A stretch of 64,000 nt of DNA from Ranitomeya imitator (GCF_032444005.1 NC_091288.1:220844001-220908000); one strand, 5' to 3'; shown: positions 1,502 to 57,291, numbered from the stretch's first letter. The notes: generated from the letters alone by a model not told the origin. Numbers and translations are program-made.

Positions 1502-2438
1502 AACACAGTGGTAACTCTCTGAGTACAGATAATGTAGTAGATGTCACCTGCAGTCCTATGTAACACCACAGATAACACAGTGATCACTCTCTGAGTACAG
1601 ATAATGTAGTAGATGTCACCTGCAGTCCTATGTAACACCACAGATAACACAGTGATAACTCTCTGAGTACAGATAATGTAGTAGATGTCACCTGCAGTCC
1701 TATGTAACACCACAGATAACACAGTGATAACTCTCTGAGTACAGATAATGTAGTAGATGTCACCTGCAGTCCTATGTAACACCACAGATAACACAGTGAT
1801 AACTCTCTGAGTACAGATAATGTAGTAGATGTCACCTGCAGTCCTATGTAACACTACAGATAACACAGTGATCACTCTCTGAGTACAGATAATGTAGTAG
1901 ATGTCACCTGCAGTCCTATGTAACACCACAGATAACACAGTGATCTCTCTCCGAGTACAGATAGTGTAGTAGATGTCACCTGCAGTCCTATGTAACACCA
2001 CAGATAACACAGTGATCACTCTTTGAGTACAGATAATGTAGTAGATGTCACCTGCAGTCCTATGTAACACTACAGATAACACAGTGATAACTCTCTGAGT
2101 ACAGATAATGTAGGAGATGTCACCTGCAGTCCTATGTAACACCACAGATTACACAGTGATCACTCTCTGAGTACATATAATGTAGTAGATGTCACCCGCA
2201 GTCCTATGTAACACCACAGATAACACAGTGATAACTCTCTGAGTACAGATAATGTAGTAGATATCACCTGCAGTCCTATGTAACACCACAGATAACACAG
2301 TGATAACTCTCTGAGTACAGATAATGTAGTAGATGTCACCTGCAGTCCTATGTAACACTACAGATAACACAGTGATGACGCTCTGAGTACAGATAATGTA
2401 GTAGACGTCACCTGCAGTCCTATGTAAGACCACAGACA
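1502..2438 (-). repeat. 72-bp satellite array 1 (~13 units), in intron 1 of the minus-strand protease paralog
   Basis: Tandem unit (minus sense) GTTACATAGGACTGCAGGTGACATCTACTACATTATCTGTACTCAGAGAGTTATCACTGTGTTATCTGTGGT; gives the 24-aa periodic ORFs; same unit as 33262-34930 and 55537-57291 but in opposite orientation. Confidence 0.97.
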
Positions 2439-2467
2439 CTATGTACATGGTGATGTTAGCCTCTTAC

Positions 2468-2510
2468 CCAGGTGCAGGGCTATCAGCACATACAGCAGAT
2501 TGCTCTCCAT
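2468..2510 (-). CDS. First (signal-peptide) exon of a serine protease paralog; remainder presumably left of the window
   Basis: Minus strand ATGGAGAGCAATCTGCTGTATGTGCTGATAGCCCTGCACCTGG|GTAAG = MESNLLYVLIALHL+G, 43 nt, phase-1 donor. Same length, phase and donor as 33182-33224 and 55472-55514; 31/43 nt identical to the latter. Confidence 0.7.
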
Positions 2511-2742
2511 GTCTTCTCCTCGCGTTCCCTTCTCGGCTCGTCACTTGGTTGATGTAGAGGTCGTCATTCTTGCGCTAACTCTTTGTTCTAGAGGGAATCT
2601 CGTAGTTTACGGTCCTGTTATGGGCTTTATGACGTCTTTTTTTCCTTATTTGACTCTTCTGGTAAATAAACAACAAAATATAAAAGAAACTCCAATATGT
2701 GAATCACAGGTGAAATGTCCAACCACCACTTGTCCGCAGGTA

Positions 2743-3474
2743 CGGTGGGTACGGAAAGTATTCAGACCCCTTTACATTTTTCACTCTTTGTTTCATTGCA
2801 GCCATTTGGTAAATTCGCAAAAGTTCATTTTTTCCTCATTAATGTTCACTCTGCACCTCATCTTGACTGAAAAAACAGAAATGTAGAAATTTTTGCAAAT
2901 TTATTAAAAAAGAAAAACTGAGATATCACATGGTCATAAGTCTTCAGCCCCTTTGCTCAGACTCTCATATGTAAGTCACAGGCTGCCCATTTCCTTGTGA
3001 TCCTCCTTGAGATGGTTCTGCTCCTTCATTGGAGTCCAGCTGTGTGTAATTTAACTGATTGGACTTGATTTGGAGCGGCGCACACCTGTCTATATAAGAC
3101 CTCACAGCTCACAGTGCATGTCAGACCAAAGGAGAATCATGAGGTCAAAGGAACTGGCCAAGGAGCTCAGAGACAGAATTGTGGCAAGGCACAGATCTGG
3201 ACAAGGTTACAACAGAAGTTCTGCAGCACTCAAGGTTCCTAAGAGCACAGTGGCCTCCATAATCCTTAAATGGAAGAAGTTTGGACCACCAGAAGTCTTC
3301 CTAGACCTGGCCGTCCAGCCAAACTGAGCAATCGTGGGAAAAGAGCCTTGGTGAGAAGGTAAAGAAGAACCCCAAGATCACTGTGGCCGAGCTGCAGAGA
3401 TGCAGTAGGGAGATGGGAGAAAGTTCCACAAAGTCAACTATCACTGCAGCCCTCCACCAGTTGGGCATTTATGG
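2743..3474 (+). mobile_element. Tc1-like transposon, 5' fragment (left TIR plus N-terminal transposase)
   Basis: TA then CGGTGGGTACGGAAAGTATTCAGACCCC TIR; ATG at 3139 gives MRSKELAKELRDRIVARHRSGQGY..LKVPKSTVASIILKWKKFG (Tc1 HTH region), frameshifted and cut off by the 34-bp array. Confidence 0.85.
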
Positions 3475-5810
3475 TCACAATTCAAAGCTGAAGCATAGAG
3501 CTTGATGGTCACAATTCAGAGCTGAGGCATAGAGCTTGATGGTCACAATTCAGAGCTTAGGCATAGAGCTTGATGGTCACAATTCACAGCTGAGGCATAG
3601 AGCTTGATGGGCACAATTCACAGCTGAGGCATAGAGCTTGATGGGTACAATTCACAGCTGAGGCATAGAGCTTGATGGTCACAATTCACAGCTGAGGCAT
3701 AGAGCTTGATGGTCACAATTCAGAGCTGAGGCATATAGCTTGATGGTCACAATTCAGAGCTGAGGCATAGAGCTTGATGGTCACAATTCAGAGCTGAGGC
3801 ATAGAGCTTGATGGTCACAATTCAGAGCTGAGTCATAGAGCTTGATGGGTGCAATTCAGAGCTGAGGCATATAGCTTGATGGTCACAATTCAGAGCTGAA
3901 GCATAGAGCTTGATGGTCACAATTCACAGCTGAGGCATATAGCTTGATGGTCACAATTCACAGCTGAGGCATAGAGCTTGATGGTCACAATTCACAGCTG
4001 AGGCATATAGCTTGATGGTCACAATTCACAGCTGAGGCATAGAGCTTGATGGTCACAACTCAGAGCTGAGGCATAGAGCTTGATGGTCACAATTCACAGC
4101 TGAGGCATAGAGCTTGATGGGCACAATTCACAGCTGAGGCATAGAGCTTGATGGTCACAATTCACAGCTGAGGCATAGAGCTTGATGGTCACAATTCAGA
4201 GCTGAGGCATAGAGCTTGATGGTCACAATTCACAGCTGAGGCATAGAGCTTGATGGTCACAATTCACAGCTGAGGCATAGAGCTTGATGGGCACAATTCA
4301 GAGCTGAGGCATAAAGCTTGATGGTCACAATTCACAGCTGAGGCATATAGCTTGATGGTCACAATTCACAGCTGAGGCATAGAGCTTGATGGTCACAATT
4401 CAGAGCTAAGGCATAGAGCTTGATGGTCACAATTCAGAGCTGAGACATAGAGCTTGATGGGCACAATTCACAGCTGAGGCATAAAGCTTGATGGTAACAA
4501 TTCAGAGCTGAGACATATAGCTTGATGGTCACAATTCAGAGCTGCGGCATAGAGCTTGATGGTAACAATTCAGAGCTGCGGCATAGAGCTTGATGGTCAC
4601 AATTCAGAGCTGAGGCATAGAGCTTGATGGTAACAATTCAGAGCTGAGACATATAGCTTGATGGTCACAATTCAGAGCTGCGGCATAGAGCTTGATGGTC
4701 ACAATTCAGAGGTGAGGCATAGAGCTTGATGGTAACAATTCAGAGCTCAGACATATAGTTTGATGGTCACAATTCAGAGCTGCGGCATAAAGCTTGATGG
4801 TAACAATTCAGAGCTGAGACATATAGCTTGATGGTCACAATTCAGAGCTGAGGCATAGAGCTTGATGGTAACAATTCAGAGCTGAGACATATAGCTTGAT
4901 GGTCACAATTCAGAGCTGCGGCATAGAGCTTGATGGTCACAATTCAGAGCTGAGGCATAGAGCTTGATGGTAACAATTCAGAGCTGAGACATAGAGCTTG
5001 ATGGTAACAATTCAGAGCTGAGACATATAGCTTGATGGTCACAATTCAGAGCTGCGGCATAGAGCTTGATGGTCACAATTCAGAGCTGAGGCATAGAGCT
5101 TGATGGTCACAATTCAGCGCTGCGGCATAGAGCTTGATGGTCACAATTCAGAGCTGAGGCATAGAGCTTGATGGTCACAATTCACAGCTGAGGCATAGAG
5201 CTTGATGGTCACAATTCACAGCTGAGGCATAGAGCTTGATGGTAACAATTCAGAGCTGAGGCATAGAGCTTGATGGTCACAATTCAGAGCTGAGACATAT
5301 AGCTTGATGGTCACAATTCACAGCTGAGGCATAGAGCTTGATGGTCACAATTCAGAGCTTAGGCATAGAGCTTGATGGTCACAATTCAGAGCTGAGGCAT
5401 AGAGCTTGATGGTCACATTTCACAGCTGAGGCATAGAGCTTGATGGTCACAATTCAGAGCTGAGGCATACAGCTGGATGGTAACAATTCAGAGCTGAGGC
5501 AAACATGCTTGATGGTCACAATTCAGAGCTGCGGCATATAGCTTGATGGTCACAATTCAGAGCTGAGACATATAGCTTGATGGCCACAATTCACAGCTGA
5601 AGCATAGAGCTTGATGGTCACAATTCACAGCTGAGGCATAGAGCTTGATGGGCACAATTCACAGCTGAGGCATAGAGCTTGATGGGCCCAATTCAGAGCT
5701 GAGGCATAGAGCTTGATAGTTGCATTTCACAGCTGAGGCATAGAGCTTGATGGTCACTATTCAGAGCTGAGGTATAGAGCTTGATTGTCACAATTCAGAG
5801 TTCAGACAAA
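3471..5810. repeat. 34-bp minisatellite (~69 units), decaying to about 5940
   Basis: Unit ATGGTCACAATTCA(G/C)AGCTGAGGCATAGAGCTTG repeated head-to-tail. Confidence 0.97.
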
Positions 5811-6228
5811 GAGCCTGTTACTTTCCCTTCTGAGCTGAGGTACTTCGCTTTAGGTTTACTCTTCATAGCTGAGGTATGAAGCTTAAGGGTTACACTCCAC
5901 AGCTGTAAATATAATTGATGCACTTCAGAGCTATGGCATGGGGCTTATTGATTATTATCAGCAACAGAAAGCACCTGTAATCAGAGGGCATTACATCTCA
6001 CAGCCGTGGGTCCACAACCATATCATGGGTACTGTGTTGGCTCAGACCCCAGCGCAGCTTGCACCTTCAGCTGCCTGCAGACCCAGGTAAGTGGAACTTG
6101 CCTAAAGCCAACTGTGTAGCTCTTCCCTTGAAACTCATGCTCATCCGGCACCTCTCAGTCCATCACTCATAAAGGTCTAGTAGTCATTCTCATCTTGATC
6201 AGTGTGTTAATGGCACAAACATACAAGG

Positions 6229-13504: not shown

Positions 13505-16500
13505 ATGGGCGCCCAGAGCAAAGTCCTGGGAATGCATCTGGTGCTGCTGATAATGGCCTTCATTGGTGAGTACCATCTTCTCCATCAGTTGTCCTTGGGT
13601 TTCTTGCACTTCCATACCATGTCATTGAGCCAATCTGGACACGTCTAAAAATGATTTGTTGTATTACAGCTCCCCTTTCTGCCTCCAATAACACAACATC
13701 ATCCCCACCGGTGTGCGGCTCCCCGGTCTTCTCCAGCCGGATAGTTGGAGGCACCAATGCTCTCGATGGAGAGTGGCCGTGGCAGATCAGCTTACGTTAT
13801 CATGGTAGCCATATATGTGGTGGGACCCTGATCTCCAGCCAGTGGGTGATGTCTGCAGCTCACTGCTTCTCAAGGTGTGTGATCACTGGGGTTAGAGAAG
13901 GACAATGATATGGCCGGAAACCCATGCACAATTATCTCATGTTTTTCTAGATAATTTACATTGGATGTGAAAATAATTTTCTTGGTTCCAGTAGGCTTTT
14001 CATGGAAGTGCTCCCCATTTTCTAGAAGCCTTCAGAGATGATCGTAAAAGATGATTTCTAAATCTATTGTGTATAACGATATTATTGTGGGACTTAAAGG
14101 AATAAGATGGAAAAGCAGTTATGTAGCAGCATATAGCGCCTTTAATTATATGGTTCTCTTCTTGCGGCTAATGGTATTTAAGTCCGCCTTGGATTATATA
14201 GCATTTTGAAGTGCCATAATAACTTATTAAGGACATTTTTGTGTCAAGGAAGTGATTCTACTGATGCCATAGTCGCCAACGTGACGTCATTCTTTTCTGT
14301 CTGTGGTCACCAATTTGCATTATACAAATAGCGCAGTCTCACTATGGCTACCTTCATCCACCATATCCTCTCCTCTCATTCCCAGGCCTGTCAGTCCATA
14401 TTCCTACACCATACAGCTGGGGAGATACCAGTTATCACTGGCGGACAATCATACAGTCACCTCTGATGTGAGTGACATCGTCATACACCCCCTGTATAAC
14501 TCAAGTGATGGACTCCAAGGGGACATCGCCCTACTGCAGCTCTCCAGTCCGGTCACCTACACCAAGTACATCCAGCCGATCTGCCTGCCCGCCGCCTCCG
14601 TCACCTTCCCCTGTGGCCTGGAGTGCTGGGTCACCGGCTGGGGCACCATAAACTCAGGAGGTAAGAGACGGCTTTATCAATTGTTCTTCAACTTTCATAA
14701 AATATAATTACATTTTCACTAACTTATAGGATTATGTCCAGATAAATGGCAAAACCACTGGAGAAGTGAAGACATGAGAGTAGGGAAGTGGAGAAAAGAA
14801 GGGAACACGGAGCAAAATTCAAGACTTGGACTGCTTGGTTTGGCAGAGTTTTGGTGGAAGGGGTTTACCATTTTTGCTGTTGCCTTGCGGTTGAGGTGCG
14901 CGAAGTGGTTGAAGTTGGGGCATCTTATTATGGGGAGTCTGTCCATTTTCTAGAGCTCATAAAGTGTAGACTCACAGTAAAGAGGTCCTTGTATGCTCTA
15001 AAAAATCCATAGCCTTAGAGTGTATGACCCTGCTGATTGGCAGACAGTAGTAGTAATATTTCCGGGACTCATCGCCCGTGTATTCGGTGAGTGGTGGCAG
15101 CGTGTATGAGCAAGTGTGCGGCCTGGGTCGGTGTATGATTTATGCTCCCATTGCAGCATTGGACAGAGGTTGAATGCTGGACTGAGAGTGGGGAGATAGA
15201 TTAACCCTTGTAGGCACAACCCCAAGTAATGTGCTGAGAAGCGGGTATGTGACAATGGCCAATAAGAAAATCTGCATTTTATTTTCGAAGTTGTGAAGTA
15301 AGACATAAGACACTCAAGACACATTTAGACAAGCCGACCATCAGTGAACTGGGATTTCTATGAACGCTCACGGTCATCAGCCCCTGTAGACATCAAGGAA
15401 CTACGGGATGAACGAGCTACACAATATTTTATGGCAGCATCAAAAATAATTATTGCTCTCGGCAGCACATAACCTAGTGTAAGCAGGAGATGTGCTGCCA
15501 ACAACATGAAGCTGTATGGGGAGAGAACCATCAAAATAATGATCGTTCTGTTCTCATCAGTATTCGCTAACAGGCCAGGTAATGAGCTTCGATCAACTTG
15601 TATATAGGCACTCGTTAATGGCCTAACCCTCTAGAGGCGTCCTTCCATAAAGACTCTGCATGGAGCACAAGTATGGCGGCGTTCTTGGGTCCATACTGAC
15701 CCGCCATGTAGTTCAGGGTGGCCGACGGGGTGCGTAAGCTTCAGGGTCACTTTCTTAATTGTAGGCATTGATTGGTGGTCTCCTTATGTCTCTCTTGAGT
15801 GTTCATTTGTCCCCCTCCTTTTGCAGTTGATTTATTGTACCCTGAAACTCTCCAGAAGGTGATGACTCCAATCATTGACCGAGCTCGATGTGATGATCTC
15901 TACCATGTGGGCTCCTACACCAGCAGCAGTATCTCCATCATCCTGGATGACATGATCTGTTCTGGTTACATAGATGGAGGCAAAGACTCCTGCCAGGTAC
16001 TGACTTGTCCGATGCCACCACCACCCTGTGGCGCCCTCCTGTAGGTGAACAGGCACGTGTACGGTAATAACTAGTGAGACAGTATCACCTAGAACAAATC
16101 TTTCTGAGCTCAAAATTTGCTCCATGGTCCCAATTCAATATTGCATTTAAAGGGAACCCGTCATGTAAAAAAAACACCATTATCCTGCAGAAATAGGGTC
16201 AATCTGCAGGTTAATAGCGTCCTACAGCCATGTGGCCGCCTCACTGAAAGACCGACTACTGGGAGGACATGAGCTTTATTCCTTCTGCCGCTTCTTGTTT
16301 TCAGTCATAGAGGCGCGGCCAGAGCGGCTTTAGTCACCTCCCTTAAAACAGAGCAGCGGCTGTAACCACACCTTGTCACTGACTGACAGCCAGCTCTGAC
16401 TGACAGCCGGCTCTGTACTTACACACTGCTCAGTCGGCTGTCAGTCAGTTGTTTGTTTTTCAGGTTGGTTTTTGTTTTGTGTCAAATTCTTTGAATAAGT

Positions 16501-17917
16501 TGGGCCAATTTAAAGTTTAATTTCTTCTTCATCAGTTTTATCATCTGTTCACCATAGTAGACGTGGTTTTTGGAACACTGATCTTTATTCCAGTCCTCTT
16601 CTGCACCCCTAGAGGTTTTTTTTTTTGGTATGCCAGAATTGTTTTGCACAAATATTAAAGTTCCATGTGTGTTTTTTAACGGATGGTGCAACTTTTTACT
16701 CCAACGATGCAAAAAAAAGCTAACAAACAAAAGTAGAGGACATTTGAACAAAAATTCTTTAACTCATGAGCGCCATTTTGAAGAATTTGTTGTAAAAAGC
16801 ATCAACAAATGCCGTAAGTCAGAAAAGAAAATGATTTAAAGGGATATCCTCAAGTTGTCTCTTGAGCAGCTCAGAGCTGCCTGACATGTGGCCGGGGCGG
16901 CTTTCATCCTTGAGGGACAGTTCTGATAAGCAGCAGAGCTGTTATATTAGTAGAACTGTAAAGCTCTGCACATGTTCTGCTACAACACTTTCATCAGTGG
17001 TTTGTTCTGAGTCTACACTTCCATCACTGGATATACACATAGAGATAACAGGGCATTTAAACAATGCTCCGGCCAGTGAGAGCAGTGACTAGGGGAACTT
17101 CACTGGAAGAAGCATATATGGGAGCAATTTTGCAAGATTTATAACAGCAGATTGTCAGGAGCTGAGAAGGAGGGGTATGTGAGCAGATCTTCTGTATAGA
17201 AATCAATGGGCTGCAGAGAGGTGGCTGGGATATTAGGAGTTAACCCTTCACCTATGCACAGTGGAGGAGCTCCATGGAAAACAGCTGTACACTATGAAAG
17301 ATAAAAGCCCTCACAGCAGGAGAATGTCAGCAGATACTGTAGAAAAAGCAAGTCAGTTCCAACTTGTTTATTTTCATGATGTCTAACTAATTAAAGCAGT
17401 TTGATAACTGGAGAATACCCCTTTAATAAAAACCACACACAACGAATTGAGCTATACATTTGCTGCTGATTGTAGACATATCTGTGTAGTGATGGGGTGA
17501 TCGTCTTTGTTTCCTTGTCCCTGGAGTAACTTGTCTGGATGTGGTTGAGAATATAGGACCGATATTTGTTGATGGACATGGTCACCTTCATGTTACATAT
17601 TTTTTACTCTGCCAGATTAGGATGATTTTGTAGGACGACATTTTCCTTTTTCATAATTTCCGCTGAATCGTATTTCTTCCAGGGAGACTCCGGGGGACCT
17701 CTCATATGTAAAGTCCAAGGCGTCTGGTACCAAGCCGGTGTTGTAAGTTGGGGAGATGGATGTGCTCTATCGCATCGCCCCGGGGTGTACACCCTGGTAC
17801 CCGTCTATACACCATGGATCCAGAGCTACGTGGCGGATGTCACCTTCAGTGACCTTGGAGATATACCGCCACCTTCCATAGACTGTGATGCAATTTTTGG
17901 GACAACCGCATTGCCTG
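13505..17917 (+). CDS. Trypsin-like serine protease, signal peptide plus domain 1 (exons 1-5 of a probable two-domain gene)
   Basis: Exons 13505-13565, 13670-13874, 14386-14660, 15827-15996, 17683-17917, all GT-AG and in frame. [20 protein letters not shown] signal; CGSPVFSSR|IVGG activation site; triad AAHC, DIAL, GDSGGP; KDSCQ (Asp189). Reading through the 17918 donor reaches a stop at 17994. Confidence 0.92.
14720..15340 (-). mobile_element. Possible L1-clade ORF2 3' remnant in intron 3
   Basis: Minus-strand translation LSPAFNLC...GRTLAHT and downstream segments loosely resemble the C-terminal Cys-rich region of L1 ORF2; heavily degraded, boundaries approximate. Confidence 0.4.
16840..17422. 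mobile_element. T2/Kolobok-type MITE
   Basis: TTAA on both sides (16836-16839, 17423-17426); TIRs AGGGATATCCTCAAGTTGTC vs AGGGGTATTCTCCAGTTATC (16/20). Confidence 0.7.
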
Positions 17918-18373
17918 GTAAGAAGGAGACGCTGCCCTGTCGCCATGTTCCCGTGGTGCAGACTCTTGTTATAACAATCATAGTAGAAAAATAATTTTGA
18001 TTATTTTTCTCATTGGGTTGCAAAAACATTTACAAGTGAAACATTTGGGTAATTGGTAATTCAGGCAGCAGAAATATGTGATGATCTCTAGGAAATGTTC
18101 ATATATAATATTACGTTCTCAGAAAGGTGTATCTACAGTGAATGAGCCTTACCGGGTTAGTCCCAATTATTATGTTACTATCGTCTAACCCAAGAATTAG
18201 GGGTCACGTAATAATTGCCGGGAGTCTGACATCTGGAACGCTCTGCGATCCCGAAATCAGGGCTTTGGATCCAAGCTCCCCAGAGCTCCGACATCAATGG
18301 AGGTGCACATGACCTTCTGTCTGCCGTTGCTTGTGGAGGTGCCGGAGAATTAGAGCGCTGTGTTGGGGGGGGG

Positions 18374-19107
18374 TGTCATGATCCCAATGGCAGGGAATCA
18401 CAAAAGGACAAGCACAAACGAGCTTTAGGGTGATGGAACCTGAGCTGACCGCGACCCTAAACCTAAACACACAAATAATAATAGCCGGGGAACGTGCCTA
18501 CGTTGATCCTAGACGTCTCGCACCAGCCGAAGATCTAACTTCCCCTATTAGAAGAAACACAGACCTCTCTTGCCTCCAGAGAAATCCCCCACAGAAATAG
18601 CAGCCCCCCACATATAATGACGGTGAAATGAGAGGAAGGCACATATGCAGTAAGAAAACAGATTCAGCAAAATGAGGCCCGCTAAAACTAGATAGCAGAG
18701 GATACAAAAGTAAACTGCGCGGTCAGCAAAAAACCCTTCAAAAAACCATCCTGAAATTACTTGAACTCATGTTCCAACTCATGGAACATGAGGAGCAATT
18801 ACAGCCCACTAGAGCAACCAGCAGCAAAGAAACACGTATCTGCAAGCTGGACAAGACAAAAATAAAGCAAAACGTGGAACAAGGAAATCAAAAACTTAGC
18901 TTGTCCTGAAGATTACTGAAGCCAGAAGCTGAGGTAACAAAACACTCTGATAACCTTGATAGCCGGCCAGGAAATGACAAGAAAGCCTGGTTAAATAGGA
19001 AACTCCCATATCCTGATAGAACAGGTGGACACCAGAGACAGCAGAACACAAATCACCCAGTACCATCAGTAACCACCAGAGGGAGCCCAAAAACAGAACT
19101 CACAACA
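18374..19107 (-). repeat. 3' LTR of the chromovirus
   Basis: TG...CA termini; abuts the PPT (plus strand GTACCCCCCCGTTGAGG from 19108). Confidence 0.95.
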
Positions 19108-22100
19108 GTACCCCCCCGTTGAGGAGGGGTCACCGAACCCTCACGAAAACCACCAGGGCGACCAGGATGAGCCCTATGAAAAGCGCGGACCAAATCATCA
19201 GCATGAACATCAGAGGCAACCACCCAAGAATTATCCTCCTGACCATAACCCTTCCACTTGACCAAATATTGGAGTTTCCGTCTGGAAACACGAGAATCCA
19301 AGATCTTCTCCACAACATACTCCAATTCTCCCTCCACCAGCACCGGAGCAGGAGGCTCAAGCGAAGGAACAACAGGTACCTCATACCTCCGCAACAACGA
19401 CCGATGGAACACATTATGAATAGCAAACGATGCCGGGAGATCCAAACGAAACGACACAGGGTTAAGAATTTCCAAGATCCTATAAGGACCGATGAACCAA
19501 GGCTTGAACTTAGGAGAAGAGACCTTCATAGGAACAAACCGAGAAGACAACCACACCAAGTCCCCAACACGAAGTCGAGGACCCACGCGGCGACGGCGAT
19601 TAGCAAACTGCTGAGCCTTCTCCTGGGACAACTTCAAATTGTCCACCACATGACTCCAAATCTGATGCAACCTATCCACCACCATGTCCACTCCAGGACA
19701 ATCAGAAGGCTCCACCTGACCAGAGGAAAAACGAGGATGAAACCCCGAATTACAAAAGAAAGGAGAAACCAAGGTAGCAGAACTAGCCCGATTATTAAGG
19801 GCAAACTCGGCCAGCGGCAAAAAGGTAACCCAGTCATCCTGATCAGCAGAAACAAAACACTTCAAATAAGTTTCCAAGGTCTGATTAGTTCGCTCCGTCT
19901 GGCCATTCGTCTGAGGGTGGAATGCAGACGAAAAGGACAAATCAATGCCCATCTTAGCACAGAACGTCCGCCAAAATCTAGACACAAACTGGGATCCCCT
20001 GTCAGAAACGATGTTCTCCGGAATCCCATGCAAACGAACCACGTTCTGGAAAAACAGAGGGACCAACTCAGAGGAGGAAGGTAACTTAGGCAAGGGTACC
20101 AGATGAACCATTTTAGAAAAGCGGTCACACACAACCCAGATGACGGACATTTTCTGAGAGACAGGGAGATCCGAAATAAAGTCCATGGAAATGTGCGTCC
20201 AAGGCCTCTTCGGGATAGGCAAAGGTGACAACAATCCACTGGCCCGAGAACAGCAAGGCTTAGCCCGAGCACAAACCTCACAAGACTGCACAAAAGAACG
20301 CACATCCCTCGACAAGGAAGGCCACCAAAAAGACCTGGCCACCAAGTCTCTAGTACCAAATATTCCAGGATGACCTGCCAACGCAGAAGAATGGACCTCG
20401 AAGATGACTCTACTGGTCCAACTATCCGGAACAAACAGTCTCTCAGGCGGACAACGGTCAGGTTTACCCGCCTGAAACTCCTGCAAAGCACGTCGCAAGT
20501 CTGGGAAGACAGCCGACAAAATCACCCCATCCCTAAGGATACCAGTGGGCTCAGAATTTCCAGGGGAGTCAGGCACAAAACTCCTAGAAAGAGCATCCGC
20601 TTTCACATTCTTTGAACCTGGCAGGTATGAAACCACAAAATTGAAACGAGAGAAAAACAGTGACCAACGAGCCTGTCTAGGATTCAGACGCCTGGCAGAC
20701 TCAAGGTAAATCAGATTTTTGTGATCAGTCAAGACCACCACACGATGTCTAGCACCCTCCAGCCAATGACGCCACTCCTCAAATGCCCACTTCATGGCCA
20801 AAAGTTCCCGATTACCAACATCATAATTCCGCTCAGCGGGCGAAAATTTTCTAGAAAAGAACGCACATGGCTTCATCACCGAGCAATCGGAGCTTCTCTG
20901 TGACAAAACCGCCCCTGCTCCAATCTCGGAAGCATCAACCTCAACCTGGAAAGGAAGCGAAACATCTGGCTGACGCAACACAGGAGCAGAAGAAAACCGG
21001 TGTTTAAGTTCCTGAAAGGCCTCCACAGCCGCAGGAGACCAATCAGCAACATCAGCACCCTTCTTAGTCAAATCCGTCAAAGGCTTAACAACACTAGAAA
21101 AATTAGTTATGAAACGACGATAGAAATTAGCAAAGCCCAAGAACTTCTGTAGACTCTTAAGAGATGTAGGCTGCGTCCAGTCACAAATAGCCTGAACCTT
21201 GATGGAATCCATCTCAATAGTAGAAGGGGAAAAAATATACCCCAAGAAAGAAATCTTCTGGACTCCAAAGAGACACTTTGAGCCCTTTACAAACAAAGAA
21301 TTGGCCCGCAGGACTTGAAACACCTTCCTGACCTGCTGAACATGAGACTCCCAGTCATCAGAAAAAACCAAAATATCATCCAAATACACAATCATAAATT
21401 TATCCAGATATTCACGGAAAATATCGTGCATAAAGGACTGGAAGACTGGAGGAGCATTAGAAAGTCCGAAAGGCATTACCAAATACTCAAAATGGCCCTC
21501 AGGCGTATTAAATGCGGTTTTCCACTCATCACCTTGCTTTATTCGTATAAGATTATACGCACCCCGAAGATCAATCTTAGTGAACCATTTAGCCCCGTTA
21601 ATGCGAGCAAACAAATCAGTCAACAAAGGCAAAGGATACTGATATTTTACGGTAATCTTATTCAAAAGACGATAATCTATACAAGGCCTCAAGGAACCAT
21701 CTTTTTTGGCCACGAAAAAAAAACCTGCTCCCAAAGGGGACGAAGATGGACGGATATGTCCCTTTTCCAAGGACTCCCTAACATAATCCCGCATAGCAGT
21801 ATGCTCTGGCACTGACAGATTGAACAAACGACCTTTAGGAAATTTACTACCAGGAATTAAATCTATAGCACAATCGCAATCCCTGTGAGGTTGAAGCGAA
21901 CTGAGCTTAGGCTCCTCAAAAACATCCCGATAATCAGACAAAAATACAGGAACCTCAGAAGGAGTAGATGAAGCGATAGAAATCGGAGGTGCATCATCAT
22001 GAACCCCCTGACATCCCCAGCTTAACACAGACATTGTTTTCCAGTCAAGGACTGGATTATGAGTTTGTAACCATGGCAGACCAAGTACTAGAACATCATG

Positions 22101-32790: not shown

Positions 32791-33152
32791 CCCAGTAGAC
32801 ACATCTCAACAACAATGAGATAGCTATTAATGTTATAAGCACCTATACAGCCATGTAACAACCTCCACATGAACAAAACAGCTGACAGGTTCCCTTTTAA
32901 CTCCCTTAAAAACGCTTCTATCCAAAATGAAATCCAGCCATCACTAAGGACAAGTCACAGGTGGGAAAATCAGGGGAGGGGATCGGTCATGTGTGGAAAT
33001 ATGGACATTGCTTCATGTTCACTCACATTTATTGCATCCAAAGGAGTCAATTTACCTGCAGAAAAAAGGAGTAAAAACTCGTAAAAGGAGGCCGATATAA
33101 AAGAACATTTCTAAGTGGACAAAAGTGCAACAACGTTCCCACCTCATCCTCA

Positions 33153-33158
33153 TATAAA
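33153..33158 (+). promoter_or_regulatory. TATA box candidate for the 33182 gene
   Basis: TATAAA 29 nt before the ATG, within a segment homologous to the region upstream of 55472 (CATATA at 55421). Spacing leaves almost no 5' UTR, hence low confidence. Confidence 0.4.
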
Positions 33159-33181
33159 TGAGGTCACTAAGAACAGAAGAA

Positions 33182-43244
<10,063 letters not shown>

Positions 43245-43601: not shown

Positions 43602-45803
43602 GGCACCAAACCCACTGAGACATAGACAAGAGAGGGGGCACCAAGCGTACTGAGACATGGACAAGAGAGAGGACACCAAACCTACTGAGACATGGACAAG
43701 AGAGAGGTCACCAAGCCTACTGAGACATGGACAAGAGAGAGGTCACCAAGCCTACTGAGACATGGACAAGAGAAAGGTCACCAAGCGTACTGAGACATGG
43801 ACAAGAGAGAGGACACCAAGCGTACTGAGACATGGACAAGAGAGAGGGGGCACCAAGCCTACTGAGACATGGACAAGAGAGAGGTCACCAAGCCTACTGA
43901 GACATAGACAAGAGAGAGGTCACCAAGCCTACTGAGACATGGACAAGAGAGAGGTCACCAGGCCTACTGAGACATGGACAAGAGAAAGGGCACCAAGCGT
44001 ACTGAGACATGGACAAGAGAGAGGACACCAAGCGTACTGAGACATCGACAAGAGAGAGGTCACCAAGCCTACTGAGACATGGACAAGAGAGAGGGGGCAC
44101 CAAGCCTACTGAGACATGGACAAGAGAGAGGTCACCAAACCTACTGAGACATAGACAAGAGAGAGGACACCAAGCGTACTGAGACATGGACAAGAGAGAG
44201 GTCACCAAGCCTACTGAGACATGGACAAGAGAAAGGTCACCAAGCGTACTGAGACATGGACAAGAGAGAGGACACCAAGCATACTGAGACATGGACAAGA
44301 GAGAGGACACCAAGCCTACTGAGACATGGACAAGAGAGAGGGGGCACCAAGCCTACTGAGACATGGACAAGAGAGAGGTCACCAAGCCTACTGAGACATA
44401 GACAAGAGAGAGGTCACCAAGCCTACTGAGATATGGACAAGAGAGAGGTCACCAGGCCTACTGAGACATGGACAAGAGAAAGGGCACCAAGCGTACTGAG
44501 ACATGGACAAGAGAGAGGACACCAAGCGTACTGAGACATCGACAAGAGAGAGGACACCAAGCCTACTGAGACATGGACAAGAGAGAGGGGGCACCAAGCC
44601 TACTGAGACATGGACAAGAGAGAGGTCACCAAACCTACTGAGACATAGACAAGAGAGAGGACACCAAGCGTACTGAGACATGGACAAGAGAGAGGACACC
44701 AAGCCTACTGAGACATGGACAAGAGAGAGGGGGCACCAAGCCTACTGAGACATGGACAAGAGAGAGGACACCAAGCCTACTGAGACATGGACAAGAGAGA
44801 GGGGGCACCAAGCCTACTGAGACATGGACAAGAGAGAGGTCACCAAGCCTACTGAGACATAGACAAGAGAGAGGGCACCAAGCGTACCGAGACATGGACA
44901 AGAGAGAGGGGGCACCAAGCCTACTGAGACATGGACAAGAGAGAGGTCACCAAGCCTACTGAGACATGGACAAGAGAGAGGGGGCACCAAGCCTACTGAG
45001 ACATGGACAAGAGAGAGGTCACCAAGCCTACTGAGACATGGACAAGAGAAAGGGCACCAAGCCTACTGAGACATGGACAAGAGAGAGGACACCACGCCTA
45101 CTGAGACATGGACAAGAGAGGGGGCACCAAGCCTACTGAGACATGGACAAGAGAGGGGGCACCAAGCCTACTGAAACATGGACAAGAGAGAGGGGGCACC
45201 AAGCCTACTGAGACATAGACAAGAGAGAGGGCACCAAGCCTACTGAGACATGGACAAGAGAGAGGGGGCACCAAGCCTACTGAGACATGGACAAGAGAGA
45301 GGTCACCAAGCCTACTGAGACATGGACAAGAGAGGGGACACCAAGCCTACTGAGACATGGACAAGAGAGAGGACACCAAGCCTACTGAGACATGGACAAG
45401 AGAGGGGGCACCAAGCCTACTGAGACATGGACAAGAGAGGGGGCACCAAGCCTACTGAGACATGGACAAGAGAGAGGACACCAAGCCCACTGAGACATGG
45501 ACAAGAGAGGGGGCACCAAGCCTACTGAGACATGGACAAGAGAGGGGGCACCAAGCCCCCTGAGACATAGACAAGAGAAAGGGCACCAAGCCCCCTGAAA
45601 CATCGACAAGAGAGGGGGCACCAAGCCCCCTCAGACATAGACAAGAGAGGGGGAACCAAGCCTACTGAGACATGGACAAGAGAGGGGGCACCAAGCCCCC
45701 TGAGACATAGACAAGAGAAAGGGCACCAAGCCCCCTGAGACATAGACAAGAGAGGGGGCACCAAGCCCCCTGAGACATAGACAAGAGAGGGGGCATCAAG
45801 CCC
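43602..45803. repeat. 34-37-bp minisatellite
   Basis: Unit CACCAAGC(C/G)TACTGAGACATGGACAAGAGAGAGG(T/A/GGG); 35- and 37-bp units on the left, mostly 34-bp units on the right. Confidence 0.97.
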
Positions 45804-52062: not shown

Positions 52063-53317
52063 CCGTTTTGTCTGTCGGCATGGCTGGTGAGTGTCATGAA
52101 CTAATTGCTCTCCTATGTTGCAATACAGTGTTTAAAACGTCATCTTGAACCTTTAGACATCCACTTTACAATCCTTAGCACTTCCTCTTTTCAGTAGCAA
52201 CTTTTCAAGCTATATTAGGTCCCAGCATGGTCACACGGGAAGGCGAATACTGCAGGACGCTGTGAAAACATGAGGTCTCTTGGGGGCCAGAAGCTTCACC
52301 TCTCACCTGACGCGAGGTGCCACATTTTTTATGAAAACAATAGAAAACACCAGGTCAAATCCCTGTTCATAACAACAACTTTGAGGCAATTTTTTAAAAA
52401 CCGTAATGTTTTGCCCCAATAATGTAATTAATGTAGTTTTAAGACTGAGAGTCTAAGCTTTAGAATAAAATCTACAGTAGATTGCAACATTAGCCTTGGC
52501 CCGGGCTGAGATACCACTGCTGGTAATCAGAAGTAAGGAGAGACACGCATGAGACCATTAGTGGCCAGGAAGCATCTTACATGCTCTTGATCACTGATGT
52601 CCAACTCTACATATCAGGTAAGACCTTGGCAGGGAATGGTTTAGAGGGAACCTATCAGCGCGTTTTTACATACGATAATTGGGTTGGAAGTGCAATAGGA
52701 GCATGTCAATTAAATTTGAAGAAATATTCCAAGTGCAATGACACGCCCCAGTGCACTTTTCCTGATTTGCATATGGCATCTCAACTAGATCTGTTACATC
52801 AGATCTCTACAAATTGTATCATTGTAATGGGGGACATGGCCCTAAACAGCCATTCCTGTACTCCTGTATGTGGACGCCTGCAGGCAGGATCCCTTTAAGT
52901 CCCCTATCCAGAATGGTTATCAGTCATAATGAATGGGTGGGGACGGAGACTTTGCTTCATATTCACATTTCTGATTTCGTGTTTTTAGTTATTCATTTAC
53001 TGGGAGGAAATAAGGTGTGAAAAGTTTGAGTTGTGAAATCTTACCTGCAAATTGTACAACTGAGACAAAAAAGAGAAAAAAATTGTTTCCTTCACCAAAA
53101 AGGTTTTTGTACCAATAATCCAAAGATCCATCTTTGGCTAAGGCTAAACTATTGACACCTACCGGAGGGGGATTAGTCATAGGAGGAATTTTGAAGTCTG
53201 GCAAAGACGACCCCGTACTGAGGAGCAGTGAAAATCCAACATCAGATAAGAACAGGACAGTGCTCCTCTCCAAAATACAGCCTGATGTAAGAAGAAGAGG
53301 GGACGCTGCACACTTCC

Positions 53318-54733
53318 CGGGCACAATGGTGGACACAGCTTGGGCACAATAGTGTAAATCACCAGAGCACAATGGTGGGCACAGCCCGGGCACAATAGTC
53401 AACACAGCCCGGGTGGTGGACACTGCCCAGGCACAATGGTGGAAACAGCCAATGCATAAAGGAGGACACGGCCTGGGCACGAAGGTAGATGCTGCTCGGG
53501 CACAATGACGGACTCGACCCAGGCACGACAATGGACACTGTCTGGGCACAATGGTGGACACAGCCCAAGGCACGAAGGTGGACGCTGCCCGGACACAATG
53601 GCAGACTTGACTCAGGCACGAAGGTGGTCACAATGGTGGACATGGCATGGGCACAATGGTGGACACGGCCCGAATACAATGCTGGATATGGCCAGTGCGC
53701 AATGGTGGACTTGGCCCAGGCATGAAGGTGGACAGTGCCTGGGCACAATGGTGGACATGGCATTGGCACAATGGGGGACACTGCCTGGGTATGAAGGTGG
53801 ACATGGCTCCAGCACAATGGTAGAGACAGCCCGGGCACAATGGTGGACATGACCAGAGCACAATGGAGGATATGACTAGGGCACAATGGTGGACACAGCC
53901 TGGGCACAGTGGTGGACATGGCATGGGCACAATGGTGGACACGGCCCGGATACAATGGTGGATATGGCCAGTGCACAATGGTGGACACTGCCCCAGCACA
54001 ATGGGGGGCATTGCTGGGGCATGAAGGTGAACAGAGCCCGAGCACAATGGTGGACATGACCAGAGCACAATAGAGGGCATGACCAGGGCACAATGGTGGA
54101 CAAAGCCTGGGCACAATGATGAACACAGCTCGGGCACAATGTTAGACATGGCCCAGGCACAATGGTGGACACAGCCTGGGCCCAATGGTGGACACAGCTC
54201 GGGCCCAATGGTAGACACAGCCTGGGCCCAATGGTGGACACAGCTCGGGCACAATGTTAGACATGGCCCGGGCACAATGGTGGACATAGCCTGGGCACAA
54301 TGGTGGACACAGCTCGGGCACAATGTTAGACATGGCCCAGGCACAATGGTGGACACAGCCTGGGCCCAATGGTGGACACAGCTCGGGCCCAATGGTAGAC
54401 ACAGCCTGGGCCCAATGGTGGACACAGCTCGGGCACAATGTTAGACATGGCCCGGGCACAATGGTGGACACAGCCTGGGCCCAATGGTGGACACAGCTCG
54501 GGCACAATGTTAGACATGGCCCGGGCACAATGGTGGACACAGCCTGGGCCCAATGGTGGACACAGCTCGGGCACAATGTTAGACATGGCCCAGGCACAAT
54601 GGTGGACACAGCCTGGGCCCAATGGTGGACACAGCTCGGGCAAAATGGTAGACATGACCAGAGCACAATGGTGAACTCTGCCCTGGCACAATGTGGGAAA
54701 CTTCCCGAGCATGGAGGTGGACACAGCCCGGCA
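53318..54733. repeat. 23-bp minisatellite with 69/92-bp higher-order blocks
   Basis: Unit GGGCACAATGGTGGACACAGCC(T/C); right part repeats fixed variant trimers/tetramers (23-aa periodic ORFs). Confidence 0.95.
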
Positions 54734-54734: not shown

Positions 54735-55080
54735 CACTCTTCGGAGTTGTGTCTCCAAAATCAATTTCTAAATTAGTTATGTTGTCAAGTAAAATAGAAA
54801 TATGTCCAACATTCAACTTATGATCCATTCTATGCTCTGCGTGATAAAATATGGAAAAGACATTTCCATGATCACACGCAAGGAACATTGTAGCTAAATG
54901 TGGGAAACTCAGAGAGTCATAGCGTTTGGTGAAGTCGCCATAAAAAGCCGTCATCTGTAAGAGGCTGCGGGTAACTCTACTGTAACCTCCAATATGTTCT
55001 GCAGGATCAGTCTCCATGACTGTATGGTCACCGTACGGCAGGAAGATTGGTCTCAGTGTTTGGATGGTTGTTTTCATTCA
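54735..55080 (-). pseudogene. Possible degraded non-LTR RT fragment
   Basis: Minus translation AFYGDFTKRYDSLSF resembles the D-x-x-K-A-Y-D motif of LINE RTs; nothing else conclusive. Confidence 0.35.
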
Positions 55081-55471
55081 GTAACAGCAGGGCCGTCCCC
55101 TATCGTCCACCATAATGAGGGTCTCCGTAGTGGTAACCATGGCTACCTGGGTAGTGGCCCACTCAGATGGGTTTTGGCCCTCACTCCTGTGCTGAACCCC
55201 TCGTTACACCTCCACAATAACTCCATGAACCTACGAAGACTGATATCGGCCATTAATGATGAGTATGGAAAGGGGATGGGTGGGGACGGGACTTTGCTTC
55301 ATACATGTGAATGGTCATTAGGAAATTAGCATAAAAAAATCGTAAATTATACAAAGAGGCAATAAAAGAAAAAAAAGTCTCCAGATAGTCAAAAGTTTAA
55401 GAACTTTCCCTCCCACAACACATATATCTGTGGAGCTGCAAGGAACCAAAAGAAGGCGGCAAAGCGGAGAA

Positions 55472-55514
55472 ATGCCAAGGAACCTGCTCCATGTGCTGAC
55501 AGTCCTACATGTGG
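55472..55514 (+). CDS. First (signal-peptide) exon of a further serine protease paralog; remainder presumably right of the window
   Basis: ATGCCAAGGAACCTGCTCCATGTGCTGACAGTCCTACATGTGG|GTAAG = MPRNLLHVLTVLHV+G; 43 nt, phase 1; 32/43 nt identical to 33182-33224; upstream region also homologous. Confidence 0.72.
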
Positions 55515-55536
55515 GTAAGAGGCTGCACTTATAGGG

Positions 55537-57291
55537 GCGTTACATAGGACTGCAGATGACATCCACAACATTATCTGTACTCAGAGTGTTATCACTGTGT
55601 TATCTGTGGCGTTACATAGGACTGCAGGTGACATCTACTACATTATCTGCACTCAGAGAGTTATCACTGTGTTATCTGTGGTGTTACATAGGACTGCAGG
55701 TGACATCCACAACATTATCTGTACTCAGAGTGTTATCACTGTGTTATCTGTGGCGTTACATAGGACTGCAGGTGACATCTACTACATTATCTGTACTCAG
55801 AGAGTTATCACTGTGTTATCTGTGGCATTACATAGGACTGCAGGTGACATCTCCTACATTATCTGTACTCAGAGAGTTATCACTGTGTTATCTGTGGTGT
55901 TACATAGGACTGCAGGTGACATCTACTCCATTATCTGTACTCGGAGAGTTATCACTGTGTTATCTGTGGCATTACATAGGACTGCAGGTGACATCTCCTA
56001 CATTATCTGTACTCAGAGAGATATCACTGTGTTATCTGTGGTGTTACATAGGACTGCAGGTGACATCCACTACATTATCTGCACTCAGAGAGTGATCACT
56101 GTGTTATCTGTGGTGTTACATAGGACTGCATGTGACATCTACTACATTATCTGTACTCAGAGAGTTATCACTGTGTTATCTGTGGTGTTACATAGGACTG
56201 CAGGTGACATCTACTACATTATCTGTACTCAGGGAGTTATCACTGTGTTATCTGTGGTGTTACATAGGACTGCATGTGACATCTACTACATTATCTGTAC
56301 TCAGAGTTATCGCTGTGTTATCTGTGGTGTTACATAGGACTGCAGGTGACACCTACTCCACTACCAGTACTCAGAGAGTTATCACTGTGTTATCTGTGGT
56401 GTTACATAGGACTGCAGGTGACATCTACTACATTATCTGTACTCAGGGAGTTATCACTGTGTTATCTGTGGTGTTACATAGGACTGCATGTGACATCTAC
56501 TACATTATCTGTACTCAGAGTTATCGCTGTGTTATCTGTGGTGTTACATAGGACTGCAGGTGACACCTACTCCACTACCAGTACTCAGAGAGTTATCACT
56601 GTGTTATCTGTGGTGTTACATAGGACTGCAGGTGACATCTACTACATTATCTGTACTCAGGGAGTTATCACTGTGTTATCTGTGGTGTTACATAGGACTG
56701 CAGGTGACATCTACTACATTATCTGTACTCAGAGAGTTATCGCTGTGTTATCTGTGGTGTTACATAGGACTGCAGGTGACATCTACTACATTATCTGTAC
56801 TCAGAGTCATCACTGTGTTATCTGTGGTGTTACATAGGACTGCAGGTGACATCTACTACATTATCTGCACTCAGAGAGTGATCACTGTGTTATCTGTGGT
56901 GTTACATAGGACTGCAGGTGACATCTACTACATTATCTGTACTCAGAGAGTGATCACTGTGTTATCTGTGGTGTTACATAGGACTGCAGGTGACATCTAC
57001 TACATTATCTGTACTCAGAGAGTCATCACTGTGTTATCTGTGGTGTTACATAGGACTGCAGGTGACATCTACTACATTATCTGTACTCAGAGAGTTATCA
57101 CTGTGTTATCTGTGGTGTTACATAGGACTGCAGGTGACATCTACTACATTATCTGTACTCAGAGAGATATCACTGTGTTACCTGTGGTGTTACATAGGAC
57201 TGCAGGTGACATCTACTACATTATCTGTACTCGGAGAGTTATCACTGTGTTATCTGTGGTGTTACATAGGACTGCAGGTGACGTCTACTAC
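55537..57291 (+). repeat. 72-bp satellite array 3 (~24 units)
   Basis: Same unit as arrays 1 and 2; begins ~22 nt after the donor at 55515. Confidence 0.97.

What the first reader, a model, noticed from the sequence alone, without database searches (positions are those of the whole stretch)
2438..57291. Three diverged paralogous signal-peptide exons are each followed within ~20-40 nt by the same 72-bp satellite
Seen: 43-nt phase-1 exons MESNLLYVLIALHL (2510-2468, minus), [14 protein letters not shown] (33182) and MPRNLLHVLTVLHV (55472) each end in G|GTAAG and are followed, in the same sense orientation, by a 0.9-1.8 kb array of one 72-bp unit. The exons I compared share only 31-32 of 43 nt, yet monomers from different arrays usually differ at only a few of 72 positions. 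The protease with a different exon 1 (13505) has no array. Inference: either the array was co-duplicated with the gene and kept homogeneous between loci by gene conversion or selection, or it inserted repeatedly at this site. Either way exon + satellite behaves as one module, and it predicts two protease genes the ORF track misses.
Basis: partly seen in the sequence, partly recalled or inferred. Interest (0 to 1): 0.78.

Follow-up and report, generated by a model that had tools for sequence, protein, structure and literature searches.

The report
Protease first exons followed by satellite
Three related protease genes of a poison frog each carry the same 72-letter repeat array just behind their first exon; the site is most likely inherited, and the repeat is a very abundant family in these frogs, so nothing here shows that exon and repeat work together.

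Summary
Three 43-nt phase-1 exons (2510-2468 minus, 33182, 55472) end in G|GTAAG. Each is followed after 21-37 nt, in sense, by an array of one 72-bp unit starting in the same phase. The exons share 30-32 of 43 nt. All arrays have the identical consensus unit.

All three are real first exons of prostasin-like (PRSS27/33-like) protease genes. An RNA contig joins 33224 to exon 2 at 39572. RefSeq models join the other two to protease exons outside the window.

New findings:
- The Phyllobates terribilis ortholog has the array at the same place with a 72/72 identical consensus, while unique flanks are about 80% identical.
- In Dendropsophus the orthologous intron holds spacer plus unit once, with no array; Rhinoderma holds part of the unit.
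- In two related frogs the unit shows roughly 10^5-fold the depth of unique sequence, so it is a genome-wide satellite family.

Reading: a resident intron unit, probably already repeated, was inherited through tandem gene duplication. The arrays stay at the family consensus by turnover and exchange. Chance adjacency is excluded, and a dedicated exon-plus-satellite function is not shown.

This scan found gene-signal-derived satellites on other DNA of this genome, but not this one.

The parts
2468..2510 (-). First (signal-peptide) exon of the locus-1 protease gene: MESNLLYVLIALHL, phase 1, donor G|GTAAG.
   Evidence: Sequence. The same peptide starts P0247 and RefSeq P0322, joined to [14 protein letters not shown]. 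Exon 2 lies about 340 nt beyond window position 1 in L001.
2432..2467 (-). 36-nt spacer between the donor and the first full unit. It looks like a decayed partial unit.
   Evidence: Its similarity to the other spacers is not significant on its own.
1502..2436 (-). 72-bp satellite array 1: 13 units, all 72 nt.
   Evidence: TRF; units. The older assembly of the species holds about 15 units here (L001 10084-11125).
33047..33224 (+). 5' UTR (from at least 33047) plus first exon of gene C. Coding part is 33182-33224: [14 protein letters not shown], phase 1.
   Evidence: An RNA contig of run X3 covers 33047-33224 without a difference. It then runs on with 30 letters that equal window 39572-39601.
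33225..33261 (+). 37-nt spacer of gene C.
   Evidence: It is similar to the Phyllobates ortholog's spacer (1 of 2000 shuffles reach the score).
33262..34930 (+). 72-bp satellite array 2: 24 units, with several 70-nt variants and one 50-nt unit.
   Evidence: The orthologous array in Phyllobates terribilis is at L002 6081-7328.
39572..43244 (+). Exons 2-5 of gene C (39572-39761, 40353-40624, 41173-41342, 42960-43244). Together with exon 1 they give an intact 319-aa trypsin-like protease with AAHC, DIAL and GDSGGP motifs and a hydrophobic C-terminal tail.
   Evidence: Gene model. RefSeq P0328 residues 225-319 match 42957-43241 at 100%.
55472..55514 (+). First exon of the locus-3 protease gene: MPRNLLHVLTVLHV, phase 1.
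   Evidence: Sequence. RefSeq P0328 residues 360 onward read MPRNLLHVLTVLHV + [23 protein letters not shown]. Exons 2-5 are not in the window.
55515..55535 (+). 21-nt spacer of locus 3, shorter than the other two.
55536..57296 (+). 72-bp satellite array 3: about 24.5 units, with a local three-unit duplication (units 10-12 equal units 13-15).

Best explanation
The three 43-nt exons are the real first exons of three paralogous prostasin-like (PRSS27/33-like) serine protease genes in a tandem cluster of a poison frog (Ranitomeya imitator by the matching annotated proteins).

The 72-bp unit is old resident sequence of intron 1. A single copy of spacer plus unit lies at the same place in the orthologous gene of the tree frog Dendropsophus, and part of it in Rhinoderma. 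On the stem of the poison frogs this unit became a tandem array.

The gene, with its junction and probably the array, was then triplicated. This happened before Dendrobatidae and Aromobatidae split.

The unit also belongs to a very abundant satellite family, roughly 10^5 units in related species. The intronic arrays are kept at the family consensus by array turnover: unequal exchange within arrays, and conversion or recombination between arrays. The protease genes themselves need impose no selection for this.

Shown here:
- the exons are spliced to protease exons;
- the array start is the same in paralogs and in the ortholog;
- the consensus is identical in two genera;
- outgroup frogs hold a single-copy homolog;
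- the family is abundant.

Inferred:
- the order of amplification and gene duplication;
- exchange with other arrays;
- the absence of a host function.
For: Splicing:
- An RNA contig joins 33224 to 39572.
- Gene C is an intact 319-aa ORF.
- RefSeq or older gene models join all three exons to protease exons.

Inherited site:
- All three arrays start in the same unit phase 21-37 nt after the donor.
- The Phyllobates ortholog is syntenic, sharing the 40-mer upstream, the 23/44-mer in intron 1 and the 35-mer downstream. It has the same junction and 17.4 units.
- A RefSeq model of a fourth paralog reads [19 protein letters not shown] after its first exon. This is the translation of spacer plus unit start.

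Resident unit in outgroups:
- The Dendropsophus intron aligns colinearly with spacer plus one unit. A 35-nt block matches at 28/35, and 0 of 2000 shuffles reach the score.
- Rhinoderma matches unit positions 24-72; 7 of 2000 shuffles reach the score.
- Neither outgroup has an array.

Age:
- The protein tree puts locus 1 with Anomaloglossus P0343 (support 100/98).
- It puts locus 3 with Anomaloglossus P0166 (support 98/94).

Family-wide homogeneity:
- The consensus is identical in the three R. imitator arrays, their allele in the older assembly, and Phyllobates.
- Between-genus unit distance is 3.8-4.4 differences per 72; within-array distance is 3.0-4.3.
- Unique orthologous non-coding DNA is 79-81% identical, and the neighbouring orthologous satellites 72-80%.

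Abundance:
- Run X6 has depth 7 on the unique flank and up to 1.6 million on the unit, from 2117 contigs.
- Run X9 has 6369 contigs on the unit.

Exchange in the cluster is plausible: exon 5 of the locus-1 gene is 91% identical at protein level to gene A's exon 5, against 71% to gene C's.
Against: - The downstream ends of the three arrays fall at different unit positions. Their downstream flanks show no significant similarity among paralogs.
- The short spacers of the paralogs are not significantly alike on their own. Co-duplication of the array itself, as opposed to a single resident unit, therefore rests on the left junction only.
- Neutral turnover alone does not explain a 72/72 identical consensus in two genera whose flanks differ by about 20%. 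Some constraint or biased conversion on the family is needed, and I could not identify it.
- The copy number comes from summed contig depths in two related species. The tool warns this is not a copy number. The window's own species was not measured.
- Whether the family started at this intron or merely has an old copy here is open.
Confidence: 0.6

Rival explanations
1. The array is a host-selected cis element of these genes. It could be a first-intron enhancer or silencer: each unit has three WGATAR motifs (TTATCT twice, TTATCA once) and a CAGGTG E-box. It could instead be a splicing element: each unit has CAG|GTGACA, a 7-of-9 match to the 5' splice-site consensus. On this reading the exon and the array are kept together because the genes need both.
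For: - The unit consensus is unchanged between two genera while flanks differ by about 20%.
- The block best conserved in Dendropsophus (28/35) spans ATAGGACTRCAGGTRACAYCTACT, which includes the CAGGTR core.
- Variation among units is concentrated at positions 48-55, outside that block.
- The unit's donor is used in a RefSeq model (GVLHRTA|ATSNPADGG).
- An RNA contig leaves the unit at that same point, 33282.
Against: - The same conservation holds for a family of roughly 10^5 units spread over thousands of contigs in related frogs. It cannot be credited to these few genes.
- Array length is free: 13, 24 and 24.5 units in the paralogs, 17.4 in Phyllobates, and about 15 against 13 between two assemblies of one species.
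- The outgroup frogs manage with one unit or part of one.
- Motif matches in a repeated unit are not evidence of binding.
- No expression or chromatin data were available.
Confidence: 0.13
2. The arrays arose by repeated, independent integration at the same site. Each paralog inherited only the single resident unit. Multi-unit pieces of the abundant satellite, for example circular extrachromosomal copies, later recombined with that unit by homology. This would give arrays with the same orientation and the same left edge in each gene.
For: - A single resident unit exists in the outgroups.
- The right-hand ends and downstream flanks of the paralogous arrays are not alike.
- Units of different arrays are as alike as units of one array, and they share runs of rare variants: units 6-8 of array 1 match units 11-13 of array 2.
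- The family is abundant enough to supply donors.
- Spread of euchromatic satellite arrays through circular intermediates is described in Drosophila (PMC7403614).
Against: - It needs at least three or four parallel events, and the same again in Phyllobates unless they predate the genus split.
- The resident units of paralogs that differ by about 30% in exon and spacer would be poor recombination partners.
- Its outcome is hard to tell apart from inheritance followed by conversion.
Confidence: 0.2
3. The array is the internal repeat of a transposable element that inserted behind the exon, once or several times. The exon-like sequence might then be part of the element.
For: - Earlier notes on this genome describe transposon-borne and Penelope-borne satellite arrays (s1-280608, s1-279641).
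- In run X9, 45 contigs leave the unit at one position into a similar flank, which suggests a composite repeat somewhere in that genome.
Against: - No shared sequence flanks the three arrays apart from the exon side.
- I saw no terminal repeats or target duplications.
- The exons are spliced, conserved signal-peptide exons found across hyloid frogs without any array.
- The outgroup unit sits inside orthologous single-copy intron sequence (Dendropsophus against Rhinoderma).
Confidence: 0.04
4. The adjacency is due to chance, because the 72-mer is so common.
For: The family is very abundant in related frogs.
Against: - Take 2x10^5 units in arrays of about 20, in a genome of 6-7 Gb (size from my own knowledge). 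One array is then expected per 600 kb or so, which is 0.1 per 64-kb window.
- Three arrays are seen. Each starts within 37 nt of a paralogous donor, in sense and in the same unit phase.
- The same junction is present in Phyllobates.
Confidence: 0.01

Closest known systems
Short dispersed (euchromatic) arrays of abundant satellite families near or inside genes. Examples: Drosophila 1.688 and Rsp-like arrays (PMC7403614), Tribolium satellites in gene-rich regions (PMC11610590), alpha-satellite copies in primate euchromatin traced through orthologous loci (PMC7719264).
   Same: - Arrays of about 1-2 kb of a high-copy family lie inside genes.
- They are shared at orthologous sites between species.
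- Units are kept close to the family consensus.
- Exchange or re-seeding between arrays is invoked.
   Different: - Here the arrays sit at one homologous site of several paralogous genes, directly behind the first splice donor.
- Outgroup species keep a single-copy version of the unit at that very site.
PcP190 satellite of hyloid frogs, derived from 5S rDNA (PMC11675491, PMC4201667).
   Same: - It is a frog satellite whose unit derives from genic sequence.
- Part of its sequence is conserved over long times across families.
- It is transcribed.
   Different: - PcP190 has units of about 190 bp and lies mostly in heterochromatic blocks.
- No sequence relation to the 72-mer was tested or seen.
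- The 72-mer family was seen here only in poison frogs.
Concerted evolution of tandem repeats in introns of duplicated genes. The classic case is the 14-bp repeats in intron 1 of the human zeta-globin gene pair (own knowledge, not checked here).
   Same: Paralogous genes carry the same tandem repeat in the same intron, and the repeats are more alike than expected from the age of the duplication.
   Different: - There the repeat is private to the gene pair.
- Here it is a member of a genome-wide family, and it is equally alike in another genus.
Satellites grown from gene signals in this same genome. Earlier notes of this scan: ofd1 exon 1/intron 1 junction (s1-279632), H2B 3' end (s1-294775), single-copy progenitor in an OR intron (s1-314182).
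   Same: A short piece of functional gene neighbourhood, here the first 40-110 nt of intron 1, is amplified head to tail. A single-copy progenitor can be seen in a relative.
   Different: - Those arrays are single-locus.
- This unit is found in several paralogs and at very high copy number.

Membership tests
Trypsin-like serine protease (S1), prostasin / PRSS27 / PRSS33-like | Catalytic His, Asp and Ser in their motifs (AAHC, DIAL, GDSGGP) and a Trypsin domain. | tested here: met
   - Gene C has SAAHC at 39742, DIAL at 40486 and GDSGGP at 42960.
- It is an intact 319-aa ORF.
- RefSeq P0328, which matches the window's gene C exons (residues 225-319 at 100%), carries PF00089 in the precomputed list.
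Trypsin-like serine protease (S1), prostasin / PRSS27 / PRSS33-like | The N-terminal signal peptide is encoded by a short first exon spliced in phase 1 to the exon holding the activation site (RIVGG). | tested here: met
   - An RNA contig joins 33224 to 39572.
- Gene models show the join for the other two exons.
- The signal-peptide function itself is inferred from hydrophobicity and position; it was not predicted with a tool.
Satellite DNA family | Head-to-tail tandem units of constant length. | tested here: met
   TRF period 72, with 13 to 24.5 copies and 88-95% matches.
Satellite DNA family | High copy number at many places in the genome. | tested here: inconclusive
   - Related species show summed contig depth up to 1.6-2.1 million against 7 for the unique flank, from 2117 and 6369 contigs.
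- This is a rough measure.
- It was not made for the window's own species.
Satellite DNA family | Shared by related species. | tested here: met
   The Phyllobates terribilis array has the identical consensus. Coded organisms B and C hold the unit, mostly at 95% identity or more.
Concerted evolution confined to the paralogous arrays of the cluster | Arrays of one genome are more alike than arrays of different species, that is, species-specific variants are fixed. | tested here: not met
   There is no fixed difference between the R. imitator arrays and the Phyllobates array. Between-genus distance equals within-array distance.
Transposon-borne internal repeat | Common element sequence, terminal repeats or target duplications flank the arrays. 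| tested here: not met
   No similarity beyond the exon side among the three loci. Terminal repeats and target duplications were looked for by eye only.
Structured RNA or microRNA cluster | A stable fold beyond shuffles, or a match to a known RNA family. | tested here: not met
   Fold z-scores run from -0.6 to +0.95. The only Rfam match is below the gathering score (22 bits against 40).
Coding tandem repeat | An open frame entered from a start codon or from the upstream exon. | tested here: not met
   - Two sense frames of the unit lack stops, but the unit has no ATG.
- Read-through from each of the three exons meets a stop in the spacer (sequence).
- 70-nt units break the frame.

The most novel reading that the evidence does not exclude
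The first 40-110 nt of intron 1 of a prostasin-like protease gene is the birthplace of a major poison-frog satellite of roughly 10^5 units. Tree frogs and Darwin's frog would then still hold the single-copy progenitor at the orthologous site. The unit, which carries a usable splice donor and a conserved CAGGTR core, would be under constraint that keeps it unchanged across genera.
Probability: 0.3. Interest if true: 0.6.

Novelty: new member of a known kind. Interest (0 to 1): 0.42.

Why it matters
- It corrects the annotation view of this window. Two further protease genes start here, and gene C's first exon lies 6.3 kb upstream of the rest of the gene, behind a satellite.
- It gives a clean example of how an intronic array travels with a duplicating gene while staying tied to a genome-wide satellite family.
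- If the progenitor reading holds, it offers a rare case where the single-copy origin of an abundant vertebrate satellite can be pointed to.
- It is also a caution. In this satellite-rich genome, homogeneity of arrays between loci cannot be read as locus-specific selection.

Tried and rejected
- Structured RNA or microRNA: folds are no better than shuffles and there is no Rfam family.
- Coding repeat: rejected (stops in the spacers).
- Transposon body around the arrays: no shared flank.
- Homology of the right-hand array borders of loci 1 and 2: it looked plausible by eye in alignment A4 but is not significant, so I dropped it.
- Spacer homology among paralogs: not significant alone.
- A first exon for gene B: none found.
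- A scan of JGI metagenome contigs for the unit: nothing.
P0192 was not on record. The fourth paralog is therefore known only from a protein model.
- The 216-nt window comparison was out of register and is not used.
- Literature search for a described dendrobatid 72-bp satellite: none found.
- The search of earlier findings by sequence and by words: nothing on this unit.
Full report
**What is there**

The window holds three arrays of one 72-bp unit and no other copy of it:

| Array | Coordinates | Strand | Units |
|---|---|---|---|
| 1 | 1502-2436 | minus sense | 13 |
| 2 | 33262-34930 | plus | 24 |
| 3 | 55539-57296 | plus | about 24.5 |

Each array is preceded, in the same sense, by a 43-nt open exon that starts with ATG and ends in G|GTAAG:

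- 2510-2468 encodes MESNLLYVLIALHL.
- 33182-33224 encodes [14 protein letters not shown].
- 55472-55514 encodes MPRNLLHVLTVLHV.

The exons share 30-32 of 43 nt. The first full unit starts 36, 37 and 21 nt behind the donor, always at GG[TC][GC]TTACATAGG. Units differ by 3.0-4.3 positions within an array and by 3.6-4.2 between arrays. The three consensus units are identical. Outside exon and array the three loci are barely alignable upstream and not alignable downstream.

**The genes**

Three trypsin-like genes lie on the plus strand:

- Gene A is at 13505-17994 and has a different first exon.
- Gene B is at 24567-26432 and has no first exon of its own. A Ranitomeya variabilis RefSeq model (P0151) joins it to an A-like domain.
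- Gene C has its exons 2-5 at 39572-43244. Together with the exon at 33182 they give an intact 319-aa protease with the catalytic motifs and a hydrophobic tail.

The exon 1 to exon 2 join of gene C is shown by RNA. A contig of run X3 covers 33047-33224 without a difference. It then continues with 30 letters that equal window 39572-39601.

No protease exon lies in 1-1500 (minus) or 57300-64000 (plus). Annotated proteins of Ranitomeya imitator close that gap:

- P0247 and RefSeq P0322 start MESNLLYVLIALHL + [14 protein letters not shown].
- In the older assembly of the species (L001, 99% identical to the window), exon 2 lies about 340 nt before window position 1.
- RefSeq P0328 starts with gene C. 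Its residues 225-319 are 100% identical to 42957-43241.
- P0328 then reads through the region upstream of 55472 into MPRNLLHVLTVLHV + [23 protein letters not shown], whose further exons are not in the window.

Both predicted genes therefore exist, at least as gene models. RNA junction reads for those two exons were not obtained.

**Relatives**

The first-exon peptide (M..NLLYVL.VLHV) is shared by this protease family across hyloid frogs. The protein tree shows:

- Locus 1 groups with proteins of R. variabilis, Phyllobates and Anomaloglossus (support 100/98).
- Locus 3 groups with an Anomaloglossus protein (support 98/94).
- Gene C lies with Phyllobates P0161 in the same larger clade.
- Rhinoderma, Dendropsophus and Engystomops each contribute one protein.

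The triplication is therefore older than the split of Dendrobatidae and Aromobatidae, and younger than the split from those outgroups.

**The array in another genus**

L002 is the Phyllobates terribilis gene for P0161. It is syntenic with gene C. It has the same 40-mer satellite upstream, the same 23/44-mer in intron 1 and the same 35-mer downstream. Behind its first exon come a 37-nt spacer and 17.4 units whose consensus is 72/72 identical to that of R. imitator.

- Units of the two genera differ by 3.8-4.4 positions, no more than units within one array.
- Unique orthologous non-coding stretches of the same locus are only 79-81% identical.
- The other orthologous satellites are 72-80% identical.

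A random unit's lineage should have collected about 10% change since the genera split, whatever the rate of homogenisation. The observed distance from the shared consensus is about 2.5-3%. Neutral decay does not fit, and neutral concerted evolution does not fit either. Some constraint or biased conversion acts on the unit.

**Outgroups**

The orthologous genes of Rhinoderma darwinii (L003) and Dendropsophus ebraccatus (L004) have the same first exon and donor but no array.

- In Dendropsophus the intron begins with a 40-nt spacer and then one stretch colinear with the whole unit. A 35-nt block matches at 28/35, and TGTTATCTG is present at the end. None of 2000 shuffles reach the score.
- The Dendropsophus spacer resembles the Phyllobates spacer (6 of 2000 shuffles).
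- Rhinoderma keeps the part matching unit positions 24-72 (7 of 2000 shuffles).
- The sequence behind the unit is orthologous between the two outgroups.

The unit is therefore resident intron sequence, older than the arrays.

**Abundance**

Laying contigs of four runs on 32900-33340 gave these results:

- For organism B, one contig covers the unique flank and the exon at about 91% identity and depth 7. It stops where the array begins.
- On the unit itself, 2117 contigs are laid with summed depth up to 1.6 million.
- In organism C, 6369 contigs are laid with summed depth up to 2.1 million, and most are 95% or more alike.

The tool warns that summed depth is not a copy number. The order of magnitude, 10^5 units, is still clear. 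It matches what an earlier follow-up found for another satellite of these frogs (s1-307380). The window's own species was not measured.

Chance adjacency remains excluded. About 0.1 array would be expected per 64 kb. Three are seen, each within 37 nt of a paralogous donor, in sense and in phase.

**Reading**

The junction of exon 1, spacer and unit is inherited. The arrays are local blocks of a genome-wide family. Their likeness to each other is the likeness of the whole family.

I favour amplification before the triplication, followed by turnover and exchange. I cannot separate this from later homology-guided seeding at the resident unit of each paralog. The right-hand borders differ, and the paralogs' downstream flanks are not alike.

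Exchange between paralogs does happen in this cluster. Exon 5 of the locus-1 gene is 91% identical at protein level to gene A's exon 5, against 71% to gene C's. Arrays 1 and 2 also share a run of three units with the same rare variants.

**Function**

Nothing here requires a function.

- The unit folds no better than shuffles and matches no RNA family.
- It is not coding.
- It has three WGATAR motifs and a CAGGTG box. These are motif matches only.
- Its CAG|GTGACA is used as a donor in a RefSeq model of a fourth paralog: MQKNLLYSLIVLHV + [19 protein letters not shown] + ATSNPADGG.
- An RNA contig leaves the unit at that point, 33282. The arrays can therefore supply cryptic donors.

**Limits**

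- No N runs are in the window.
- DNA for several further paralogs and orthologs could not be fetched.

Noticed in passing
window 17680-17847, compared with RefSeq P0322 residues 225-280: The last exon of the first domain of the locus-1 gene is 91% identical at protein level to gene A's exon 5, but only 71% to gene C's. The rest of that domain is closest to gene C. This looks like gene conversion or exon exchange between cluster paralogs.
   Followed up: partly
window 3471-5814, 31765-32791, 53316-54731: Each of the three first exons also has a satellite 0.4-1 kb upstream, but with three different units (34, 40 and 23 bp). The 40-mer is also upstream of the Phyllobates ortholog (L002 458-1139). 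The window holds eight large arrays in all, including 35-mers at 43602-45802 and 57884-61732.
   Followed up: partly
window 33282 (unit position 21); run X3: An RNA contig leaves the 72-mer just after CTGCAG(G). It runs on for 255 nt starting ACCTGTGTGCCCCTCTTCTCCGGGGGTCCG, which reads PVCPSSPGV in the frame of the unit's open frame. This may be a protease second exon of a paralog not in my loci. The unit's donor seems to be used in vivo.
   Followed up: partly
RefSeq P0328 residues 319-364, equal to window 55349-55471: The RefSeq model joins gene C's last exon, just before its stop, to an exon that starts 120 nt upstream of the locus-3 ATG. This makes a two-protease conjoined protein. P0320 likewise fuses two neighbouring genes through a translated 93-nt satellite. 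Such polyprotease models in this cluster may be read-through artefacts or real conjoined transcripts.
   Followed up: no
window 13505-26435: Gene B has no first exon. Its exon 2 ([19 protein letters not shown]) follows an A-like domain in R. variabilis RefSeq P0151.
   Followed up: partly
L001 10084-11125 compared with window 1502-2436: Array 1 has about 15 units in the older R. imitator assembly and 13 in the window, while the flanks are 98-99% identical. This is either array length polymorphism or an assembly difference.
   Followed up: partly
L003 6768-16206; L004 6215-7820, 12427-13013, 13736-14663: Rhinoderma and Dendropsophus share a different 35-bp satellite (TCCTATATACAAGAATATAACTACTATAATACTGC-like) in later introns of the orthologous gene. 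It spans 9.4 kb in Rhinoderma.
   Followed up: no
window 33106-33231: There is a weak Rfam match to PART1_3 (22 bits, gathering score 40) over the 5' UTR and exon 1 of gene C. I take it for chance.
   Followed up: no
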